DNA of 64,000 nt. Source: Isurus oxyrinchus (Eukaryota). Positions 56-44,450 of the stretch are shown here, one piece after another. The notes under the pieces were generated by a model. That model saw only the letters and a program-made list of their open reading frames with translations, searched no databases and was not told the DNA's origin. The DNA lies in NCBI GenBank assembly GCA_026770705.1, contig JANJGN010000026.1, forward strand, positions 35,216,001 to 35,280,000, in the 5' to 3' direction. Made by a program: the position numbers and the translations under genes. How positions within the stretch are numbered: the first letter of the stretch is position 1; each line of letters starts with the position of its first letter.

Positions 56-489
56 ATGCCTGGTATCTGTTTACACTTATGTGGTGTTATTAGACATTCT
101 AACACAGTTAAAGTTATAGTTAGCCCTCGGTTCATTTTTATTTCAGAGGAGATTCGGGCAGATGCGGGATCACAAGCTCAGACTGCACTCTACGTGTCTG
201 AAGGAGATGGTGTGATTATAGACTGTAGATTATAGACACAACAAACCTCGGTGACCCCAATCTGTGTTAATACAGACAGCATACAACGGCTCCCAGTTTT
301 ATTTTGCATCGCGAAAACGACAGAAAAATGGACACCGATATTGTCAACGGAAGATCGAAGCCAAGCAGACTAATTCAGAAAAGAAGTTTTCTTCATCGAC
401 CGCTCGAGCGGAAATAGAAGGCACAGCTCTATCTTTCTGCTGGTTGCGGTCAGAATTATTTCAAACTCATCTGCCGCTGTACAAAAACC
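56..489 (+). pseudogene. TCR alpha/delta-type V segment pseudogene with degenerate 23-RSS
   Basis: Acceptor ttcatttttatttcag ends at 146, then EIRADAGSQAQTALYVSEGDGVIIDC(RL*), YRQHTTAPSFIL and EGTALSFCWLR across frameshifts. Heptamer cagaatt (451-457), 23-bp spacer, perfect nonamer acaaaaacc (481-489). Confidence 0.75.
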
Positions 490-16395: not shown

Positions 16396-16911
16396 ATGTT
16401 GGGTTTTATTTTTTATTCATTTCTCACAGTTGCAGCTCTCTTACCCGGTAAGTCTACTAGTTATAGGATTTCCTCTTGCAGGTAACATTAATATTTTTTT
16501 AAAATTCAGTCTTATTCCTATTTAGAATGTGTTCCCTCACTTAACCTAATAAACTGGGATAACGTAATAAAATCTTAAAGTTCCTTAATTTTTAATTTCT
16601 GCAGGAGTAAGTGGTGCAGACTCGGTCTCACGTGGGTCAGATGCAGAGATGCAGTTTGAAGGAAACTCGCTGACCATTCATTACAGCTATTCCACCATTG
16701 CTACTAGATATTCCTTACAGTTATACTGTCAGCACTGGGGTAAAGCCCCCACATTCTTAATCTACATCCCGAATTATGCAAATGTTTTCAGGGCAAGGGA
16801 CGTGGGGACTCGATTTTCTGGATCTCTCGACACTTCGAAAAGTGAGGGGAATTTCACCATCAGTGACCTGCGGCTGTCTGACAGCCCGGTGTATTACTGC
16901 GGACTGAGAGA
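16396..16911 (+). CDS. Intact TCR alpha/delta-type V segment (leader 16396-16447, V exon 16605-16911), non-canonical: Cys23 to Tyr, Trp41 to Leu
   Basis: MLGFIFYSFLTVAALLP G|gtaag...ag|GVSGADSVSRGSDAEMQFEGNSLTIHYSYSTIATRYSLQLYCQHWGKAPTFLIYIP...RFSGSLDTSKSEGNFTISDLRLSDSPVYYCGLRD, with no stops. Confidence 0.85.
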
Positions 16912-16950
16912 CACAGTGACAGGGACCAGAAGGGGCGCCGTACAAAAACA
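16912..16950 (+). other. 23-RSS (CACAGTG-23-ACAAAAACA)
   Basis: Heptamer 16912-16918, spacer 16919-16941, nonamer 16942-16950. Confidence 0.95.
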
Positions 16951-22734: not shown

Positions 22735-23270
22735 ATGTGCCTCCCATGTTCCTTCTGAAAATGTGTTCAGTGGGCCAGTGTTGAAATAATCATTGGGTAT
22801 TTCATGTTTAAGTCTAGTCCTAAACTTTGGCGCATTCTGTGCTTTGTTACAGGCAAGAGGGAGAGAGAGAGTGAGAGTTCCTGCATCCCTCTGGGTTAAC
22901 GGTCTGGAAGAAAAGATAATGATGTTAGGCTGCAGTTACTGCATACCTGATAACTTTCTCTAGCTCTGCTGACACATTAATATTCCGGGTGAGATTCGAG
23001 GTATTTACTGAGGAGGTGTAGCTCGAAACATTGAGTTAGATCTCAATATTTCCATCCAAGCTCCCTGTTGACGTAGGAAAGGACCAAGAGAGTAATACAA
23101 CAATTTGAGAAATAAACCTACCAATCTTTCTCCATGGGCTTCCTCGGGATCAAATTCCCCACCGGTAAAAGCGCAAAAGAACACTTGACAGTGTTGTGAG
23201 TAGTCGCTCAGGATTTTATACGGCGACTTGGCTGTTATCTGACGCTGTGTTTCACTGCGCCATAATAGAC
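22735..23270 (+). pseudogene. Degenerate TCR V (family of 15405)
   Basis: Leader atgtgcctcccatg..., acceptor ttgttacag at 22851, MMLGCSY...RYLLRR, and after an insertion SDAVFHCA. Confidence 0.5.
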
Positions 23271-23499
23271 CGCGCTGGCCTTCATACTCAGACCGCTTTT
23301 TTTGAGGTAACCAGACTTTGTAGACCTGTCAGCAGCCACCAGATATTGTCCTGAGATTTTTGCCTTCTTTCAGCACCACTGTTCTGCTGATTATCCAGCC
23401 TGGAGGATGTGTTGGTTTCTGCTGTTACCATTGCCTGTAGTAAATATCCATGGTTTTTTATTCACAATATAACTACACCGAACCTCCATCTAATATGAC

Positions 23500-35949: not shown

Positions 35950-36453
35950 ATGGGAATCCACTTTGTTTTCACCCTGTGTGTCTGTTTACCCCGTGAGTAC
36001 CGATCACACAAACAGACATTATGTGGATTTCATATAAGGCTGCCCGAGTCCATCCCAATTACAGACAGGGGGTTTAACCCGGTTCTGTGATTCGGCTCTG
36101 ATGGTCCATGAAACTATCTCTGTTTAATTTCCAGGAGTTTTCAGTCAGCAGTGACACAAACCCCGGCAGCGGTGACCAGGAAGTAATGTCAGTCTCTCAC
36201 CATTACCTGTGTTTTCCACGCTGGTTATTGGGATATTGTCCAAACGGTGCTTTTCATCAGACAAACCCAGACCGGAGCAGAGCGGGAGCGGATCTCCAGC
36301 GGGGGGACATTGTTTGTGTCAATGGATAAAACAGAAAAGACATTTTCGTTGGAAATTTGGGATGTGAGAGTTGAAGGCACTGCCACTTATTACTGTAAAG
36401 CTCAGTACTACGTTACACAGCGACTGGCCTCGGCTTCCCGGGATACAAACATT
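35950..36453 (+). pseudogene. NAR-TCR (IgNAR-like) V segment pseudogene
   Basis: TATA near 35918; leader MGIHFVFTLCVCLP C|gtgagt (35950-35992); acceptor at 36134; frameshift, then VTQTPAAVTRK*CQSLTITCVF...FIRQTQTGAERERISSGG.LFVSMDKTEKTFSLEIWDVRVEGTATYYCKAQYY. It has the NAR-type short FR2-CDR2, YYCKA and an extra FR1 Cys. RSS cacagcg (36416), 22-bp spacer, acaaacatt. Confidence 0.85.
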
Positions 36454-36656
36454 CTCATGCAGATTATCACAAAAACAAGTAAAAAAGCGGAGTTAATTCT
36501 GCCGTTAAACGCCCAGAGTTCAGCCTCATACCGTCTGTCCCCCAGTCTAGTTTGTAGTGAGATTGGATTATTACCGTTAACAACTTGAGTTTTAAAACTA
36601 CGAAGCGTGTGTGGATGGTGAAGGCTTCCCCGGGGTTGGTGTCGGTGAAACAGTGG

Positions 36657-38760
36657 AACATAGAAACATAGAAATAGGAGCTGGAGTAGGCCGTTCGGCC
36701 CTTCGATCTTGTTCCGCCGTTCAATATTATCATGGTTGATCCTGGATCTAAACACCATATTCCCGCTTTCTGTCCATACCACTTAATGCCACTAATATCC
36801 AGAAATATGTCGATTTTTTTCTTGAATATACTCAGTGACTCCATAGACTTCTTTGGTCGAGAATTCTACAGGTTGACCACCCTCAGAGTGAAGGAATCTT
36901 CCTCATTTCGGTCGCAAATGGCCTTCCCCGTATTCTGCTGTGGCCCCTGGTTCTAGACTCCCCAACCAAGGGAAACATCCTTCCTGCATCTAGTCTGTCT
37001 AGCGCTGTTAGAATTATATGTGTTTCAATCAGAACCCCTCTCATTCTTCTAAACTCTAGTGAATGCAGGCCCAGTTGAACCAATCTCTCCTCATACAACT
37101 GTCCTGCCATCCCCAGTATCAACCTCGTGAACATTCGCTCCACTCCCTCTACGGCAAATATATCTTTTCTTGCGTAGAGAGACCAAATCTGCACGCAATG
37201 CTCCTGGTGTGTTCTCACCAAGGCCCTTTGCAACTGCAGTAAAACATCCCTACTTCTGAAATCAAATCCACTTTAAATGAAGGCCAACATATCATTTGCC
37301 TTCCCAATTGCTGCACCTGTCTGTTTAGTTTCATTGGCTGGTGTACAACGATACCCAGACTCCTTCGTACACCCATATTTCCCAATTTATCACCATTTAT
37401 ATAATGCTCTGACTTTCTGTTTTCACACCGAAGCGTATAACTTTATATTTATCCACGTTATACTGCACTTGCCATGTGATTGCCGACACAGAAAACTTGT
37501 CTAAATTGCCCTGAATCCCTCTTGCATGCTCCTCACATCTCACAGCCTCGTGCAGTTTTGTGTCGTCAGCAAACTTGGAAATATTGCATTTGGTTTCCTC
37601 ATCCAAATTATCTATATATGTTGTGAATAACTGGGGCTCAAGCACTGATCGATGCGGTACACCACTCGTCAAGGCCTGCCACCGGGATAAAGACCCATTA
37701 TTCCCACTGTCAGTTTCTGGTCTGTCAACCAATTCTCAGTCCAAGCCAGTATATTACCTCCAATCTCATGTGCTTTGCTTTTGTCCACTAGCCTCTTAGG
37801 TGGGACCTTATTAAAATCTTCTTGAAATCCAAATACACCAGATCTAGTGGTTCTCCGTTATCTATCCTACTAAAAAACTCGAGTAGATTAGTTAAGCATG
37901 ATTTCCCTTTCATAAACCGATGCCGACTTTGTCTAATCTCATTGATGCTTTCCAAGTGTTCAGTTATTTTATAACAGACTCTAGCATTTTGCCCACAACT
38001 GATGTTAGGCTAACTGCTCTGTAATTATCTGTTTTTGCTCTCCTTCCTTTTTTTTAAAATAATGGGGTTACATTTGCCACCCCCAATATGTAGGAACTGT
38101 TCCAGAGTCTATAGATTTTTGGAAGGTGACCACCTATGCATCCAATATTTCCAGCGCCACCTCCTTTAGACATCTGGGATGTGGATTATCAGGCCCTGGG
38201 GATTTTCCAGATTTTAACCCCATTAATTTCTCCACCACAATGTTTTTCACTAATGCTGGTTTCCTTCAATTCCTCGCTCTCACTGGGCCCGTGGTTCCCT
38301 AACATTTCTGGGAAATTATTTGTGTTGCCTTTTCTGAAGGCAGAACCAAAATATCTCTTCAATTTTTTTGCCATTTCTTTGTTCCCAATTATCGTTTCTC
38401 CCGTTTGTGAGTGTTTGTTTACTAATCATTTTCTCTTCTGCATATTTATGGAGGCTTTTACAATCAATTTTTATGTTCCCTGCAAGTTTACTCTCGTACT
38501 ACATTTTCCCCTTCTTGATCAGTCTTTTTTCCAGTTTTGCTGAATTCTAAACTACTTCCAACCCTCAGGATTGAAGCTTTTTCTGGAGATTTTTTATGTC
38601 TACTCGTTAGATCTAATACTATCCCTAATTTCTTTTGTAATCCATGGTTGAACCATATTATTTTTGCGCCAGACGGGAATGAATAATTTTTGTAATTCAT
38701 GCATACGCTCCTTAAATATTAACCATTGCCGATCCACTTTAATTTTAATTTCCACCATTC
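36657..38760 (-). mobile_element. CR1 LINE (5'-truncated, decayed) inserted between the NAR V and NAR J
   Basis: (aacatag)n tail at 36657; RT motifs SGVPHRSVLEPQLFTTYI..KFADDTKL, LVRTHQEHCVQIWS. Confidence 0.9.
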
Positions 38761-38994
38761 AGTTATCTTTCTTTGATATTTTTCTCTGTTTATATGAAGC
38801 GAATATCTCATGCCCAGGACCATTTACGCAGAGCTCAGGGCCTCAGAAAGAATAGTTTGAACAGATAGAGACTTTGAAACATTGAATATTGATTATTCAT
38901 TTAAACCTGCTGTATAATTGTCTACTGCCTGATGATGATTTCCCGGCAGTTGAGTTGTCAATGGTTCTTGAACTGGGAGAGTGAGAGTGGTGTG

Positions 38995-39039
38995 CGAATT
39001 ATGTAGATGGATCCAGGATGGTGGTGACTGTCACAGCCG
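38995..39039 (+). pseudogene. NAR-type J segment pseudogene
   Basis: ANYVDGSRMVVTVTA resembles NAR J YxxGxGTxVTV. The phase-1 donor is mutated to g|ataagtg; degenerate upstream RSS ggttcttga...tggtgtg. Confidence 0.55.
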
Positions 39040-39589
39040 ATAAGTGACTCTGAAGCCCGCATGTTGCAGACTGTGCTGGATATTGTTCACAGTCAGCTTC
39101 TTGTGATCAACATCGTTTCAATCACATCGAAACTAAAAAAAACGATTTCTAAGGGACCTTTTCCATTGCAGGCTTCGATTTAGGAATAGGGTATGATCGG
39201 ACAGTCGGGTCATTTACCCGCCATTTGTTTCAATTGTCTTCATATACCCAATCATTTCCTCCTTTTCCATCCTCAGATCGAAATGTGAAAGTTTGGAACT
39301 GCAGACATTTCTCTTTATTGAATGTCGATGTTTGAGAGATGGGATTGCTGTAATTTCTCTGTATCCCTGATTACTGTGAATTAAAAACGCAAAGTGCAGT
39401 GAGAGAGTGAGGATGATGCATTAATCTTATAAAGGAGAACAGGGACATAAGGAAAAAATTATAAACTGAGAGACTGTTCATTTAGAACCAGCAAGAAATA
39501 ATTCATCGAATGGGAGAGAAGGATTGGATGATCTCTGGGCTGTTCAAAGTACAATCCGAGCAAAGGGTGGTGGGCAATGTTTATGGAGA

Positions 39590-39890
39590 GAAGGACTCCA
39601 GTATGGAATGCTGTGTAAAGTCAGGTATCTAACTTAGGGAAGGTTGTACATGCTTTGGAACAAATTTTCATCAGACTGATTCCTGAAGTAAAGGGATTGT
39701 CCTATGGGAAGGGATTGAGTAGACTGGACCTGTGTTCCCTGGAGTTTACAGTAATGAGGGCGATCTCATGAGAACACATGATACCTTTAAGAAGCTTGCG
39801 AGGGAAGGTTCTAGGTGGGAGTTTCCTCAGGTTGGAAAGTCTATAACTGGGAGCCATAGTTTCAGCATAAGAGGTCGGCCATTAGAATGG
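39590..39890 (+). mobile_element. Old CR1 fragment
   Basis: agactgattcctg..gggattgtcctatgggaagggattgag..ctggagtttacag, SHSFSIRGRP. Confidence 0.6.
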
Positions 39891-40437
39891 GGAACAGAGA
39901 AGTTTCAATCAATGCTGATTAATCACAATCACTTTCATTTCGATCATGCTTTGCACAGTGATGCTGATGCTGATTGTCCCATACAATCATTTTTTGGAAA
40001 CTGATTGCCATACTGATAATAAATGTTCCATCGGGGTGTCACTCACCAAGGAAAATAGAAGCAGAAATGTAATATACAACATAGAACCATGCCAAGAGGT
40101 AGAATGACATTCGGCCCATCGTGGAGGTGCTATCACTTTCAAAGTGCAATCCAATTTTTACCATTTTTCCTGTTGTAGTATAGGTACATCAGCCATTTGA
40201 AAGTTCCCACTGAGTCTGTTCGCACCACCCATTCTGACCGCGCAGTGCAGATTGGAAAAATTCTCGATGCAAAAGAAAATTATCATCTCTGCACTTAATC
40301 ACATCTCAATGATGGTGAATACGGTTGTAACAGGCTTGCTTCAAGTTTAGAAAAACGAACGTTTCATGTCATTGACAAATTCTCCCAGGTAAACCATGGC
40401 TAAACAAACAATTAATGTTCGTTTTTTTATTCTCCAG

Positions 40438-40529
40438 ATTCCAGTTCCCTGGTGTCTTAGTGCCCGCCTCTACAAACATCTGCTGTCGGTGACACCATTA
40501 CTTGAAGCTGTGAATGTTCAGGGTTAGAT
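40438..40529 (+). pseudogene. Leaderless supporting V-delta stub of the NAR-TCR cassette
   Basis: Acceptor gtttttttattctccag at 40437 in phase 1, matching the J donor; DSSSLVS*CPPLQTSAVGDTIT*SCECSGL is FR1 up to Cys23; the remainder is deleted. Confidence 0.6.
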
Positions 40530-40774
40530 CACGGAGAGAGCTGTTCAGAAACCTGAACATGGTGGGATTACAGACACATAGTGATACAGAGCACGGAGAG
40601 AACTGTACAAAAACCTGAACATGGTGGGATTACAGACACACAGTGATACAGAGCACGGAGAGAGCTGTACAAAAACCTGAACATGGTGGGATTACAGACA
40701 CATAGAGATACAAAGCGCGGAAAGAGCTCTATGAAAACGTGAACAAAGTGGGGATTCCAGATACAGTGATACAG
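40530..40774 (+). repeat. Tandem array of 62-bp units, each containing a 23-RSS; continues into an N gap
   Basis: Unit tgaacatggtgggattacagaca-CACAGTG-atacagagcacggagagagctgt-ACAAAAACC. Perfect RSS at 40639-40677, CATAGTG variant at 40577-40615, degenerate copies at 40701 and 40762. Confidence 0.9.
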
Positions 40775-41751
40775 NNNNNNNNNNNNNNNNNNNNNNNNNN
40801 NNNNNNNNNNNNNNNNNNNNNNNNNNNNNNNNNNNNNNNNNNNNNNNNNNNNNNNNNNNNNNNNNNNNNNNNNNNNNNNNNNNNNNNNNNNNNNNNNNNN
40901 NNNNNNNNNNNNNNNNNNNNNNNNNNNNNNNNNNNNNNNNNNNNNNNNNNNNNNNNNNNNNNNNNNNNNNNNNNNNNNNNNNNNNNNNNNNNNNNNNNNN
41001 NNNNNNNNNNNNNNNNNNNNNNNNNNNNNNNNNNNNNNNNNNNNNNNNNNNNNNNNNNNNNNNNNNNNNNNNNNNNNNNNNNNNNNNNNNNNNNNNNTGT
41101 GATAAAATAGATAGAAAACGTTTTTGCCATTTAAGGACTCTTCGTTCCGGAGACAAAGGAGCAGGAAAAACAGATTGATAGATTTTATATGATGATTGAC
41201 ATAGCTTCAGATATAAATGTACATGCTGACACTGACTGGGATAAAAAGCTTGTCAGAGAAGCAATTAGAATTATAGATTGATGAATAAAAGAGAGTCGTA
41301 TCAATGTTGGAATGGGCAAACAGAGCGAAAATTAAAAATGAATGAAACAATCAAATAACAATGTTGGTTGACAGCCAAAAGTGAAAACTCCATCGATATA
41401 TTGGCCACATTATTTGCGCTCTGGGACCCTGCGCTTTATTTGGAGCCTCCTGTCAGTCGAGGCTTTCGGAATCAAGGTGGGGGGCAGGGGTGGGAGAGGA
41501 GGGAGGAGAAGTTTGAGTGGTCTTCGCCAGCATATCGGCCCCCATTGCTTCCTGCATCTATCCAAAAGCCTATGATCATTGCCGCAGTTTGTGACAATCA
41601 GCACTGCCTGCGGTCCCGCAAGCAGTCTCCCTGAACTCTTCTGTTGTGCCCCTGATACCTGGACTTGAGAACGTGTGAGGGTTCTGTGTATTCTTGCCGG
41701 TCACTGTCTATTTCTCTCTCCACCCCCCCCCCCCCCACCTCTCTCTCTCGT

Positions 41752-41870: not shown

Positions 41871-44450
41871 AAACATAGAAACATAGAAAGTAGGAGCAGG
41901 GCTATGCCATAGGCCCTTCGAGCCAGCTCCGCCATTCATCATGATTGTGGCTGATCATCCAACTCAATAGCCTGCTCCCGCTTTCTGCCCTTACCCTTTG
42001 ATCCCTTTCGCCCCAAGAGCTATATCTAACTATTTCTTGAAAGCATGCGTTATTTTGGCATCAAATACTTTCGGTGGTAGCGAATTCCATAGGCTCACCA
42101 CTCTCTGGGTGAAGACATTTCTTCTCATCTCAATTCTAAATGGTCTACCCCGTATCCACAGACTGTGACCTCTGGTTCTGGACTCCCCCGCCATCGGGAC
42201 CATCCTTCCTGCATCTACACTGTCTGGCCCTGTTAGAATTTTATAGTCTTCTATGAGATTCTGCTCTCATTCTTCTGAACCCAAGCGAATATAATCGTAA
42301 CCAAATCAATCATTCCTCAGATGTCTGTCCTGCCATCCCAGGAATCAGTTGGATAAACGTTCGCTGCACCCCCTCTATAGCAAGAACATTCTTCCTCAGA
42401 TAAGGAGCCCAAACCTGCCCATAATATTCCAGGTGTGGTCTCACCAAGGCCCTGTACAATTGCAGCAATACATCCTGCTCCTGTACTGGAATCCTCTGCT
42501 ATGAAGGTCAACGTACCATTTGCCCTCTTTTGCATCTGCTGCATCTGCATGCTTACCTTCTGCGATTGGTGTACGATGACACCCAGCTCTCGTAGCACAT
42601 TCCCCTCTCTGAATTTATAGCCATTCAGATAATAATCTCCCTTCCTGTTATTGCATCCAAAGTGGATAACCTCAAATTTATCCACATTATGCTTCACCTG
42701 CCATGCATTTTTCCACTCACTCAGCCTGTCCAAGTCACACTGAAGCAGCTCTGCATCCTCCTCACAGCTCACCCTCCCACCCAGCTTTGTGTCATCTGCA
42801 AATTTAGAGGTATTACATTTAGTTCCCTAATTTAAATCATTAATATCTATTGTTAATAGCTGGGGACGCAGCACCGATCCCTAAGGTACCCCACTTGTCA
42901 CTGCCTGCCATTCGGAAAATGTCCCGTGTATTCCTCCTCTTTGTTTCATGTCTGCCAACCAGTTTTCTATCCATCTCAACACACTTTCCCCAATCCCATA
43001 CGCTTTAATTTTACATGCTAATCTCTTCTGTCGGACTTTGTCGACAGCCTTCTGAAAGTCCAACTAAAACGCATCCACTGGCTCCCCCTCATCAACTCCA
43101 CTAGTGACATCCTCGAAAAATTCCAATAAATTTGTCGTAAATGCATGCTGACTGTCCGATTCTGCCAATATTTTCCAAGTGCTCAGCTATTAAATCTTTT
43201 ATAATGGCCTCTAGAATTTTCCCCACTAGCGACATCAGGCTGACTGGCCTTTTATTTCCTGTTTTCTCTGTACCTCTCTTTTTAAATAGTGGGGTTACAT
43301 TAGCAACCCTCCAATCTGCAGGAACTGTACCAGAGTCTATAGGATCTAGGAAGATGATCACCAATGCATCCATTATTTCTAGTGTCATTTCCTTAAGTGC
43401 TCTGGGATGTAGATTATCAGGCCCTGGGGATTTTTCGGCCTTCAATCCCATCAATTTCCCCAACACCATTTCCCTACTAATACAAATTTCTTTCAGTTCC
43501 TCCCTCTCTCTAAACCCTGAGTTTCCCAACATTTCTGGTATGTTATTTGTGACCTCTTTGTGAAGACTGAACCAAAGTATGTATTTACTTGGTCAGCCAT
43601 TTCTTTGCTCCCCATTATAAATTCCCCTGTTTCTGACTGTAAGGGACCTACATTTGTCTTCACCAACCTTTTTCTCTTCACATACCTATAGAATCTTTTA
43701 CAGTCAGGTTTTATGTTCCCTGCAAGCTTATTCTGGTACTCTATTTTCCCCTTCTTTATCAATACCTTGGTCCTCCTTTGTTGGATTCTAATCTGCTTCC
43801 AATGCTCAGGTCTTTTTTTTCCTGGCCAATTTGTATGCCTCTTCCTTGCATCTAATACTATCTCTAATTTCTCTCGTAAACCATGGTTTGGCCACGTTTG
43901 TTGTTTCACTTTTGCGCCAGGCAGGAATAACAATTGTTTCAGTTCACCCATGTGCTCTTTGAATGTTTGCCAATGCCTGTCCACCGTCATCCCTTTAAGT
44001 AACGTTTCCCAATCCATCATAGCCAACTCACGCCTCACACCATCGTAGTTTCCTTTATTAAGGTTCAAGGCCCCAGTTTCAGAATCAACTATGTCACTCT
44101 CCATATTGATGAAGAATTCTATCATTTTATGGCCGCTCATCCCCAAGGGGCCTGGCACATCTAGATTGCCAATTATTGCTTTCTCATTACACAATACCCA
44201 GTCAAGAATGGCCTGTTCTCTAGTTCGTTTCTCAACGCATTGGTCCAGAAAGCCATCCCGTATACACTCCAGGAATTCTTCCTCTACAGTATTTGATTTG
44301 GCCAAACTATATGCAGATGAAAGTCACCCATAATTACAGATGTTTCTTTATTGGATACTTCTCTAATTTCCTGCTTAATTCCAGTCCCAGCTTCACCACA
44401 GCAGTTTTGGGTCTATATACAACCTCCACTAACATTTTATGCTCCTTATA
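41871..44450 (-). mobile_element. Long decayed CR1 LINE (endonuclease to RT to 3' tail)
   Basis: EFLECIRDGFLDQ..TREQAILD, KSPGPDNLHPRALKE, DWRVANVTPLFKK, DFQKAVDKV, W..VTSGVP; (aacatag)n tail. Confidence 0.95.

What the first reader, a model, noticed from the sequence alone, without database searches (positions are those of the whole stretch)
40530..40774. Tandem array of RAG recombination signals (62-bp units, each a 23-RSS)
Seen: at least 4 head-to-tail units run into a 323-N gap. One carries a consensus CACAGTG-23-ACAAAAACC, another differs by 1 nt in the heptamer. The array replaces the body of the supporting V-delta. Known: RSSs normally occur once per segment, and coding-less RSSs such as delta-Rec and the kappa-deleting element serve as locus-deletion substrates. 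Inference: this could be a multimerised RAG substrate (deleting element, decoy or breakage hotspot), or a neutral slippage amplification of a V 3' end. The inter-RSS linker ggtgggattac is G-rich like a TCR-delta D but has no 5' 12-RSS.
Basis: partly seen in the sequence, partly recalled or inferred. Interest (0 to 1): 0.85.

Follow-up and report, generated by a model that had tools for sequence, protein, structure and literature searches.

The report
Decaying RSS minisatellite behind dead V
A shark T-cell-receptor gene piece that is already dead still carries its "cut here" recombination signal repeated at least four times in a row; this looks like a slowly decaying leftover of a trait shared by its whole gene family, not a working device.

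Summary
A 62-bp head-to-tail repeat (40526-40774, 4.0 copies, 87% match) runs into the 323-N gap. Each unit is a 23-RSS (7+23+9) plus a 23-bp linker. Only unit 2 (40639-40677) is a perfect CACAGTG-23-ACAAAAACC. The other three visible heptamers are CATAGTG, CATAGAG and TACAGTG, and two of the three other visible nonamers are damaged.

The array follows the stub of a leaderless V: splice acceptor, FR1 with two in-frame stops, and the CDR1 cysteine typical of NAR-TCR-associated V-delta. This stub lies downstream of a dead NAR-TCR V and a LINE insertion.

Reads and contigs from other samples show three things:
- The array is not an assembly stutter.
- The same RSS follows a normal V coding end (..VYYCELS..) in many paralogues.
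- Tandem units are multi-copy in this species and in a relative.

Heptamer and nonamer positions differ more between units (9/48) than spacer and linker positions (11/140), so the signals show no sign of selection.

Best reading: an inherited family minisatellite, orphaned by a deletion of the V body and now decaying. At most it holds one cryptic RAG target.

The scan has already found 4-7-unit arrays behind other supporting V-delta segments of this genome, on other DNA. I found no publication describing such arrays. The gap was not filled.

The parts
35950..36420 (+). Dead NAR-TCR V (leader, intron, V exon). In-frame TAA at 36184-36186.
   Evidence: The 73-aa stop-free piece 36187-36405 is 53-68% identical to shark NAR-type V proteins and matches Pfam V-set at E=1e-4, 22.9 bits, below the 26-bit cut-off.
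36660..38700 (-). LINE-like retroelement fragment inserted between the NAR V/J relic and the V stub.
   Evidence: ORF 37397-37732(-) has a weak RVT_1 match, E=0.0024, below the cut-off. A second copy of the same family lies at 42160-43940, 72-85% identical. Read depth is high in the one bin laid there.
40430..40437 (+). Splice acceptor (ttctccag) in place of a leader exon.
   Evidence: Sequence. No leader-like exon directly upstream in any frame. Inference, not tested with RNA.
40438..40525 (+). Stub of the leaderless (supporting-type) TCR-delta V: FR1 and the start of CDR1. Stops at 40458-40460 (TAG) and 40503-40505 (TGA). Cys23 at 40509-40511, extra CDR1 Cys at 40515-40517.
   Evidence: Translation. 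[quoted passage not shown] Paralogous reads and contigs cover it.
40526..40576 (+). Unit 0 (partial): last ~19 nt of a spacer, nonamer TCAGAAACC (40545-40553), linker. The deletion junction with the V stub is at about 40524-40527.
40577..40638 (+). Unit 1: CATAGTG (40577-40583), 23-nt spacer, ACAAAAACC (40607-40615), 23-nt linker. Heptamer position 3 is mutated.
40639..40700 (+). Unit 2: the only perfect 23-RSS. CACAGTG (40639-40645), spacer, ACAAAAACC (40669-40677), linker.
   Evidence: 0 mismatches. V-family reads join a V coding end to this heptamer (loose ends before 40639).
40701..40761 (+). Unit 3: decayed. CATAGAG, 4 spacer changes, ATGAAAACG, linker with a 1-nt insertion and a 2-nt deletion.
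40762..40774 (+). Unit 4 (start only): TACAGTG plus 6 nt of spacer, then the gap.
40775..41097 (.). 323-N gap. The array goes on into it and ends inside it, since the sequence from 41098 is not repeat. The gap was left unfilled on purpose.
   Evidence: One contig of another sample continues from unit 3/4 into further unit-like sequence (joint 40764 to 40580). No letters were taken from it.

Best explanation
This is a genuine minisatellite. Its 62-bp unit is a true V-type 23-RSS (39 bp) plus a 23-bp linker. It sits behind the dead stub of a leaderless, NAR-TCR-associated (supporting) TCR-delta V.

The array was not made for or at this locus. Tandem RSS units are a multi-copy trait of this V family, probably produced by replication slippage or unequal exchange of the V 3' end with its RSS, and carried along as the cassettes multiplied.

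In this copy the cassette died:
- The NAR V carries a stop.
- A LINE was inserted.
- FR1 carries two stops.
- A deletion of roughly 0.25 kb, running from CDR1 into the spacer of the first RSS, removed the V body.

Since then the units have drifted. Units 0-2 are 95-97% alike, which points to recent duplication or homogenisation. Unit 3 is about 80% like them and is old.

By sequence only unit 2 can still be bound and cut by RAG. If the chromatin opens in thymocytes, unit 2 could pair with a 12-RSS and give a sterile deletion, like any orphan RSS. Nothing suggests that this is selected.

Shown: the array, its anatomy, the dead stub, multi-copy status, V-family origin of the RSS, and the lack of motif conservation.

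Inferred: the slippage mechanism, the deletion history, and the lack of function.
For: Array and unit anatomy.

It is a true V RSS:
- 18 raw reads of another individual (X21), and contigs of a related species (X8), carry a V coding end (..TGTATTACTGTGAACTGAGTCGGCGCACAG, i.e. VYYCELS..) directly before the heptamer laid at 40639.
- The end of the spacer plus the nonamer (GCTGT-ACAAAAACC) recurs in the V RSSs at 451-489 and 16912-16950 of this window.

It is a multi-copy family trait:
- Read depth on units 1-2 is 50-60, against 6-18 on the stub and its upstream flank, and equals the depth on transposon bins. Contig k-mer depth shows the same in X1 and in species B.
- Contigs of species B, 111-156 nt long, lie wholly inside the array across linkers at about 91% identity.
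- At 40602 most laid reads carry the consensus G, not this locus's A.
- Scan notes report 4-7-unit arrays behind other supporting V-delta of this genome. These are leads, only partly tested here.

It is not a stutter: the units differ by 2 to about 14 changes, and an independent sample (X5) has a contig matching the distinctive unit 3 with 0 mismatches.

There is no selection on the signals: heptamer plus nonamer differ from unit 2 at 9/48 positions, spacer plus linker at 11/140, Fisher p=0.054 in the direction opposite to constraint.

The cassette is dead.
Against: One unit is a flawless consensus RSS, and units 0-2 are nearly identical. Selection or gene conversion could also produce that.

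A possibly RNA-derived run (X5) holds the array, so the region may be transcribed and accessible. The run type is only a guess.

That arrays sit behind intact V segments therefore rests on read pile-ups and on unchecked scan notes.

Homology of the linker to the V coding end is not significant (376 of 5000 shuffles score as well), so the exact duplicated segment is not settled.

Four and a bit units give little statistical power. The hidden part of the array may hold more intact RSSs.
Confidence: 0.7

Rival explanations
1. Local origin. The amplification happened at this locus only, after or during the death of the V. The read pile-up would then come mostly from a much longer array hidden in the gap plus single-RSS paralogues, and not from arrays at other V segments.
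For: Units 0-2 are 95-97% identical, which suggests recent local duplication. A contig continues the array beyond the last called base. No paralogous locus was seen directly.
Against: Species B has tandem units of its own at about 91% identity and high depth, while the immediate upstream flank (40240-40449) has no B contigs. One X1 contig shows a unit junction with a shorter linker (joint 40688 to 40580 with 3 letters between). Another aligns over 2.7 units at only 87% identity (record 8). Scan notes list arrays on other scaffolds.
Confidence: 0.12
2. Working RAG substrate. The array is a selected V-less multimer of 23-RSSs. It would act as a deleting element (as delta-Rec or the kappa-deleting element do), as a decoy that soaks up RAG, or as a programmed breakage site.
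For: It has a perfect consensus 23-RSS at 40639-40677 inside an antigen-receptor V region. The 62-bp spacing keeps the RSSs nearly in helical phase (62/10.5 is about 5.9 turns). It may be transcribed (X5).
Against: Three of four visible heptamers have lost position 1, 3 or 6. By established RSS mutagenesis, the CAC triplet is needed for cleavage. Two of the three other visible nonamers are damaged. Motif positions change at least as fast as neutral positions. No 12-RSS partner lies within the window. The surrounding cassette is a fossil. No joints were seen, although the data could hardly show them.
Confidence: 0.1
3. Generic repeat. The 62-bp unit belongs to a genome-wide satellite or a transposon-borne minisatellite that only resembles an RSS.
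For: Depth on the unit equals that of transposon families in two species. The stub and array are bracketed by two LINE fragments.
Against: A perfect heptamer-23-nonamer match by chance is about 3e-5 per window. The same 39 bp follows a bona fide V coding end in 18 reads. The spacer end is shared with other V RSSs in the window. No other copy of the unit lies in the 64 kb.
Confidence: 0.05
4. Assembly artefact: stutter or mis-join next to a gap.
For: The array abuts an N gap.
Against: The units are not identical. Raw reads of another individual and contigs of two other samples cover unit-unit junctions. One contig matches decayed unit 3 exactly.
Confidence: 0.03

Closest known systems
Tandem 23-RSS arrays behind intact NAR-TCR supporting V-delta segments of the same genome (scan notes s1-300784, s1-868558, s1-870782, s1-870771; dead-V case s1-868583)
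   Same: Same genome and same kind of V. Head-to-tail 23-RSS units, 4-7 copies. Earlier follow-ups also judged the extra copies to be tolerated, decaying passengers.
   Different: Here the V body is gone and the cassette is dead, so this copy shows what happens to the array once the V no longer matters. Those notes are unchecked AI notes. I could test them only indirectly, through read depth and contigs.
Orphan deleting RSSs: delta-Rec (human TRD), kappa-deleting element / mouse RS
   Same: An RSS without a usable coding segment inside an antigen-receptor locus. If cut, it would give a non-coding deletion.
   Different: Those are single, conserved RSSs with documented, developmentally regulated rearrangements (established knowledge). 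This one is a multimer, decaying, with no evidence of use or conservation.
V pseudogene relics that keep their RSS
   Same: A dead V with stops and truncation, still followed by a recognisable 23-RSS. Two more such relics lie in this window (about 130-489, and 23211-23300 on the minus strand).
   Different: Ordinary relics carry one RSS. This one carries at least four.
Minisatellites (10-100-bp units expanded by slippage or unequal exchange)
   Same: 62-bp unit, head-to-tail. Younger near-identical units stand beside an older diverged one. Unit variants with a different linker length appear in paralogous contigs.
   Different: The unit is a functional-type recombination signal. I found no report of such a minisatellite in the searchable literature.

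Membership tests
Canonical 23-RSS | Heptamer CACAGTG with an intact CAC | tested here: met
   Met for unit 2 only (40639-40645). Not met for units 1 (CATAGTG), 3 (CATAGAG) and 4 (TACAGTG). Absent in unit 0.
Canonical 23-RSS | Spacer of 23 +/- 1 nt and an A-rich nonamer ACAAAAACC | tested here: met
   The spacer is 23 nt in units 1-3. The nonamer is perfect in units 1 and 2, TCAGAAACC in unit 0, and ATGAAAACG in unit 3.
Canonical 23-RSS | Directly flanks a coding segment | tested here: not met
   Each heptamer is preceded by a 23-nt linker, not by a V coding end. The V body is missing. In paralogues the same RSS does follow a V coding end.
Canonical 23-RSS | Bound and cleaved by RAG1/RAG2, obeying the 12/23 rule | not testable with these tools
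   Needs LM-PCR on thymocyte DNA or a recombination substrate assay.
NAR-TcRV-associated (supporting) TcR-delta V | No leader peptide; the exon is entered through a splice acceptor | tested here: met
   The acceptor ttctccag at 40430-40437 directly precedes FR1. No leader-like exon appears upstream in any frame. The feature is as published in PMC1845163. Splicing itself was not tested.
NAR-TcRV-associated (supporting) TcR-delta V | Conserved extra cysteine in CDR1 | tested here: met
   C-E-C at 40509-40517: Cys23 followed two residues later by a second Cys (feature from PMC1845163).
NAR-TcRV-associated (supporting) TcR-delta V | Lies downstream of a NAR-TcR V(D)J unit on the same strand | tested here: met
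   NAR-type V at 35950-36420 (+), 53-68% identical to shark NAR-type V proteins.
NAR-TcRV-associated (supporting) TcR-delta V | Complete, open V exon (FR1 to FR3) | tested here: not met
   Two in-frame stops. FR2-FR3 are absent. It is a pseudogene stub.
Deleting element (delta-Rec / KDE type) | Isolated RSS conserved between species and used in programmed locus deletion | tested here: inconclusive
   Within the array the motifs are not conserved. The contigs of species B are probably paralogues, so orthologous conservation could not be judged. Usage is not testable here.
Minisatellite | Head-to-tail units of 10-100 bp with divergence between units | tested here: met
   Period 62, 4.0 copies visible, 87% matches. 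Unit-length variants appear in paralogous contigs.

The most novel reading that the evidence does not exclude
RSS ladders behind supporting V-delta segments are a selected way of handling RAG in the doubly rearranging NAR-TCR. For example, they could act as a phased landing pad that raises synapsis with D-delta, or give a mis-cut allele a second try. This orphaned ladder, which still holds a perfect 23-RSS, would then act as a V-less deleting element, a shark counterpart of delta-Rec, that removes or silences DNA downstream of a dead cassette in thymocytes.
Probability: 0.07. Interest if true: 0.8.

Novelty: new variant of a known kind. Interest (0 to 1): 0.3.

Why it matters
Recombination signals are expected once per gene segment, and stray consensus RSSs are a hazard because RAG can cut them. 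A family of V segments that tolerates ladders of RSSs, and a dead member whose ladder is simply rotting, give a natural experiment. They let one ask how much surplus RAG substrate an antigen-receptor locus can bear, and how fast an RSS decays once its V is gone.

This particular copy mainly supplies the neutral baseline: the motifs decay at least as fast as the spacer. The more interesting objects are the arrays behind intact V segments, which this scan has already reported elsewhere in this genome.

Tried and rejected
- Paralogous loci.
- Linker origin. The local alignment of the 23-nt linker to the V-family coding end (TGAAC..TG.GT.GG..CAG) is collinear but not significant: 376 of 5000 shuffles score as well. 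I do not claim it.
- FR2 origin. I considered that the unit is a piece of V framework 2, because ..VQKPEHG.. can be read across the nonamer. I rejected this because the same 39 bp follows a V coding end in paralogous reads and shares its spacer end with other V RSSs.
- D-segment reading of the linker. Rejected: there is no 12-RSS.
- RAG-made deletion of the V body. There is no heptamer-like sequence at the junction at about 40524-40527, so this has no support.
- Literature. Searches for tandem or duplicated RSSs and for NAR-TCR RSSs found nothing on such arrays. One search was an unproductive search. The original NAR-TcR paper (PMC1458790) is not held.
- Scan index.
- Copy numbers. I give only relative depths, because the genome size and so the coverage of X21 are unknown to me.
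- The gap. I did not fill the N gap or report any letters for it. I laid reads only up to the last called base.

Full report
**What is there.** Positions 40526-40774 hold a head-to-tail repeat of period 62, with 4.0 copies, 87% matches and score 356. The repeat finder shows the same 62-nt spacing. The repeat stops only because the sequence turns into 323 N at 40775-41097.

In register, each unit is a heptamer (7), a spacer (23), a nonamer (9) and a linker (23):

| Unit | Start | Heptamer | Nonamer | Note |
|---|---|---|---|---|
| 0 | 40526 | none (partial unit) | TCAGAAACC | begins inside a spacer |
| 1 | 40577 | CATAGTG | ACAAAAACC | |
| 2 | 40639 | CACAGTG | ACAAAAACC | perfect 23-RSS |
| 3 | 40701 | CATAGAG | ATGAAAACG | four spacer changes, small linker indels |
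| 4 | 40762 | TACAGTG | hidden in gap | only 13 nt visible |

The pattern search confirms the perfect RSS and the one-mismatch RSS. No shuffle of the window gives as many RSS-like hits. The refinement is that only one of four visible heptamers is intact.

**Surroundings.**
- Directly upstream, behind the acceptor ttctccag (40430-40437), frame 1 reads DSSSLVS*CPPLQTSAVGDTIT*SCECSG. This is V framework 1 with two stops, Cys23, and a second cysteine two residues later.
- A missing leader and a CDR1 cysteine are the published marks of the TcR-delta V that supports NAR-TcR V (PMC1845163).
- The stub ends at about 40525 and runs straight into the middle of an RSS spacer. FR2, FR3 and the first heptamer are gone.
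- Four kilobases upstream lies a NAR-type V with an in-frame TAA. Its open piece is 53-68% identical to shark NAR-type V proteins and matches Pfam V-set below the cut-off.
- Between the two lies a minus-strand LINE-like fragment. A second copy of that family follows the gap.
- The window also holds an intact V with a 23-RSS (16396-16950) and two more V relics (about 130-489, and 23211-23300 on the minus strand).

The locus is a V region of the shark TCR-delta/NAR-TCR type, and this cassette is a fossil.

**Is the unit a real RSS, or a look-alike?** I laid reads and contigs of four runs on 38700-40774 at 85% likeness or better. Eighteen raw reads of another individual (X21), and contigs of a related species (X8), align from the heptamer at 40639 onwards. 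Before it they carry ..TGTATTACTGTGAACTGAGTCGGCGCACAG, a normal V 3' end (VYYCELS..). The same 39 bp therefore serves as the RSS of many V segments.

The end of the spacer plus the nonamer (GCTGT-ACAAAAACC) also recurs in other V RSSs of this window. This excludes a chance look-alike. It also excludes my passing idea that the unit was a piece of framework 2.

**Is the array private to this locus?** Probably not.
- In raw reads, depth on units 1-2 is 50-60, against 6-18 on the stub and its upstream flank. That is as high as on the transposon bins. Contig k-mer depth behaves the same way in X1 and in species B.
- Contigs of species B, 111-156 nt long, lie wholly within the array and cross linkers at about 91% identity. 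Species B has no contigs on the immediate upstream flank.
- One X1 contig shows a unit junction with a shorter linker. Another aligns over 2.7 units at only 87% identity.
- At 40602 most laid reads carry the consensus G, not this locus's A.

Tandem units therefore exist in many copies, in two species. The scan's own index lists 4-7-unit arrays behind other supporting V-delta segments of this genome, plus a dead-V case. These notes are leads that agree with my read evidence.

**Not an artefact.** The units differ from one another. A contig of an independent sample (X5) matches the distinctive decayed unit 3 without a mismatch and continues into further unit-like sequence. I took no letters from it, and the gap was left as it is.

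**Selection.** Taking unit 2 as the reference, heptamer and nonamer positions differ at 9 of 48 compared sites. Spacer and linker positions differ at 11 of 140 (Fisher p=0.054). If anything, the signals decay faster than the filler.

Heptamer positions 1-3 are the ones RAG cleavage depends on. This is established knowledge from RSS mutagenesis, not tested here. Units 1, 3 and 4 have each lost one of them. By sequence only unit 2 remains competent. No 12-RSS partner lies in the window.

**Mechanism.** The most likely history has four steps:
1. A slippage or unequal-exchange duplication of the V 3' end with its RSS arose in an ancestor of this V family.
2. It spread with the cassettes.
3. In this copy the cassette died, and a deletion of roughly 0.25 kb from CDR1 into the first spacer orphaned the array.
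4. The units have since drifted, with some recent local duplication: units 0-2 are 95-97% alike, and unit 3 is about 80% like them.

Whether the linker descends from the V coding end is suggestive but not significant. If thymocyte chromatin is open here, unit 2 could still be cut and give a sterile deletion. That would be a by-product, not a function. I put 0.7 on this reading. The rivals are local origin at 0.12, a working RAG substrate at 0.10, a generic repeat at 0.05 and an artefact at 0.03.

**Comparison and novelty.** It resembles delta-Rec or the kappa-deleting element only in being an RSS without a usable coding segment. It fails the conservation test that defines those elements, and its use is untested. 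It is a V pseudogene relic and a minisatellite at the same time.

I found no paper describing tandem RSS arrays. The original NAR-TcR paper is not held. The phenomenon may therefore be unpublished. This scan has already met it on other DNA, in better-preserved form. This copy adds the neutral baseline.

Noticed in passing
window 130-489 (+): Another V relic. Its 23-RSS has a dead heptamer (CAGAATT) but a perfect nonamer, and it shares 14/14 nt (GCTGTACAAAAACC) with the array units.
   Followed up: partly
window 23211-23300 (-): V relic ending ..AVYYGAVK, followed by the decayed 23-RSS CACAGCG-23-ATAAAATCC.
   Followed up: no
window 35950-36660 (+): NAR-TCR-type V pseudogene with an in-frame TAA at 36184-36186. 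A J-like relic (..LVSVKQ) abuts the start of a LINE-like insertion at about 36660, where the splice donor would be.
   Followed up: partly
window 36900-38700 and 42160-43940: Two minus-strand fragments of one LINE-like family, 72-85% identical and about 5.23 kb apart, bracket the V stub and the array.
   Followed up: partly
window 38868-39376 and 40580-40764: A small run of another sample (X5, guessed to be RNA) holds near-perfect contigs of these two stretches. This may be sterile transcription through the dead cassette, but the run type is not on record.
   Followed up: no
window 16396-16950 (+): The only intact V of the window (V-set, E=1e-7), with a 23-RSS one mismatch from consensus.
   Followed up: partly
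window 40100-40450: At 85% likeness nearly all raw reads here differ from the window at several positions. The stretch upstream of the stub therefore has roughly ten or more diverged paralogues, in keeping with a large NAR-TCR cassette family.
   Followed up: no
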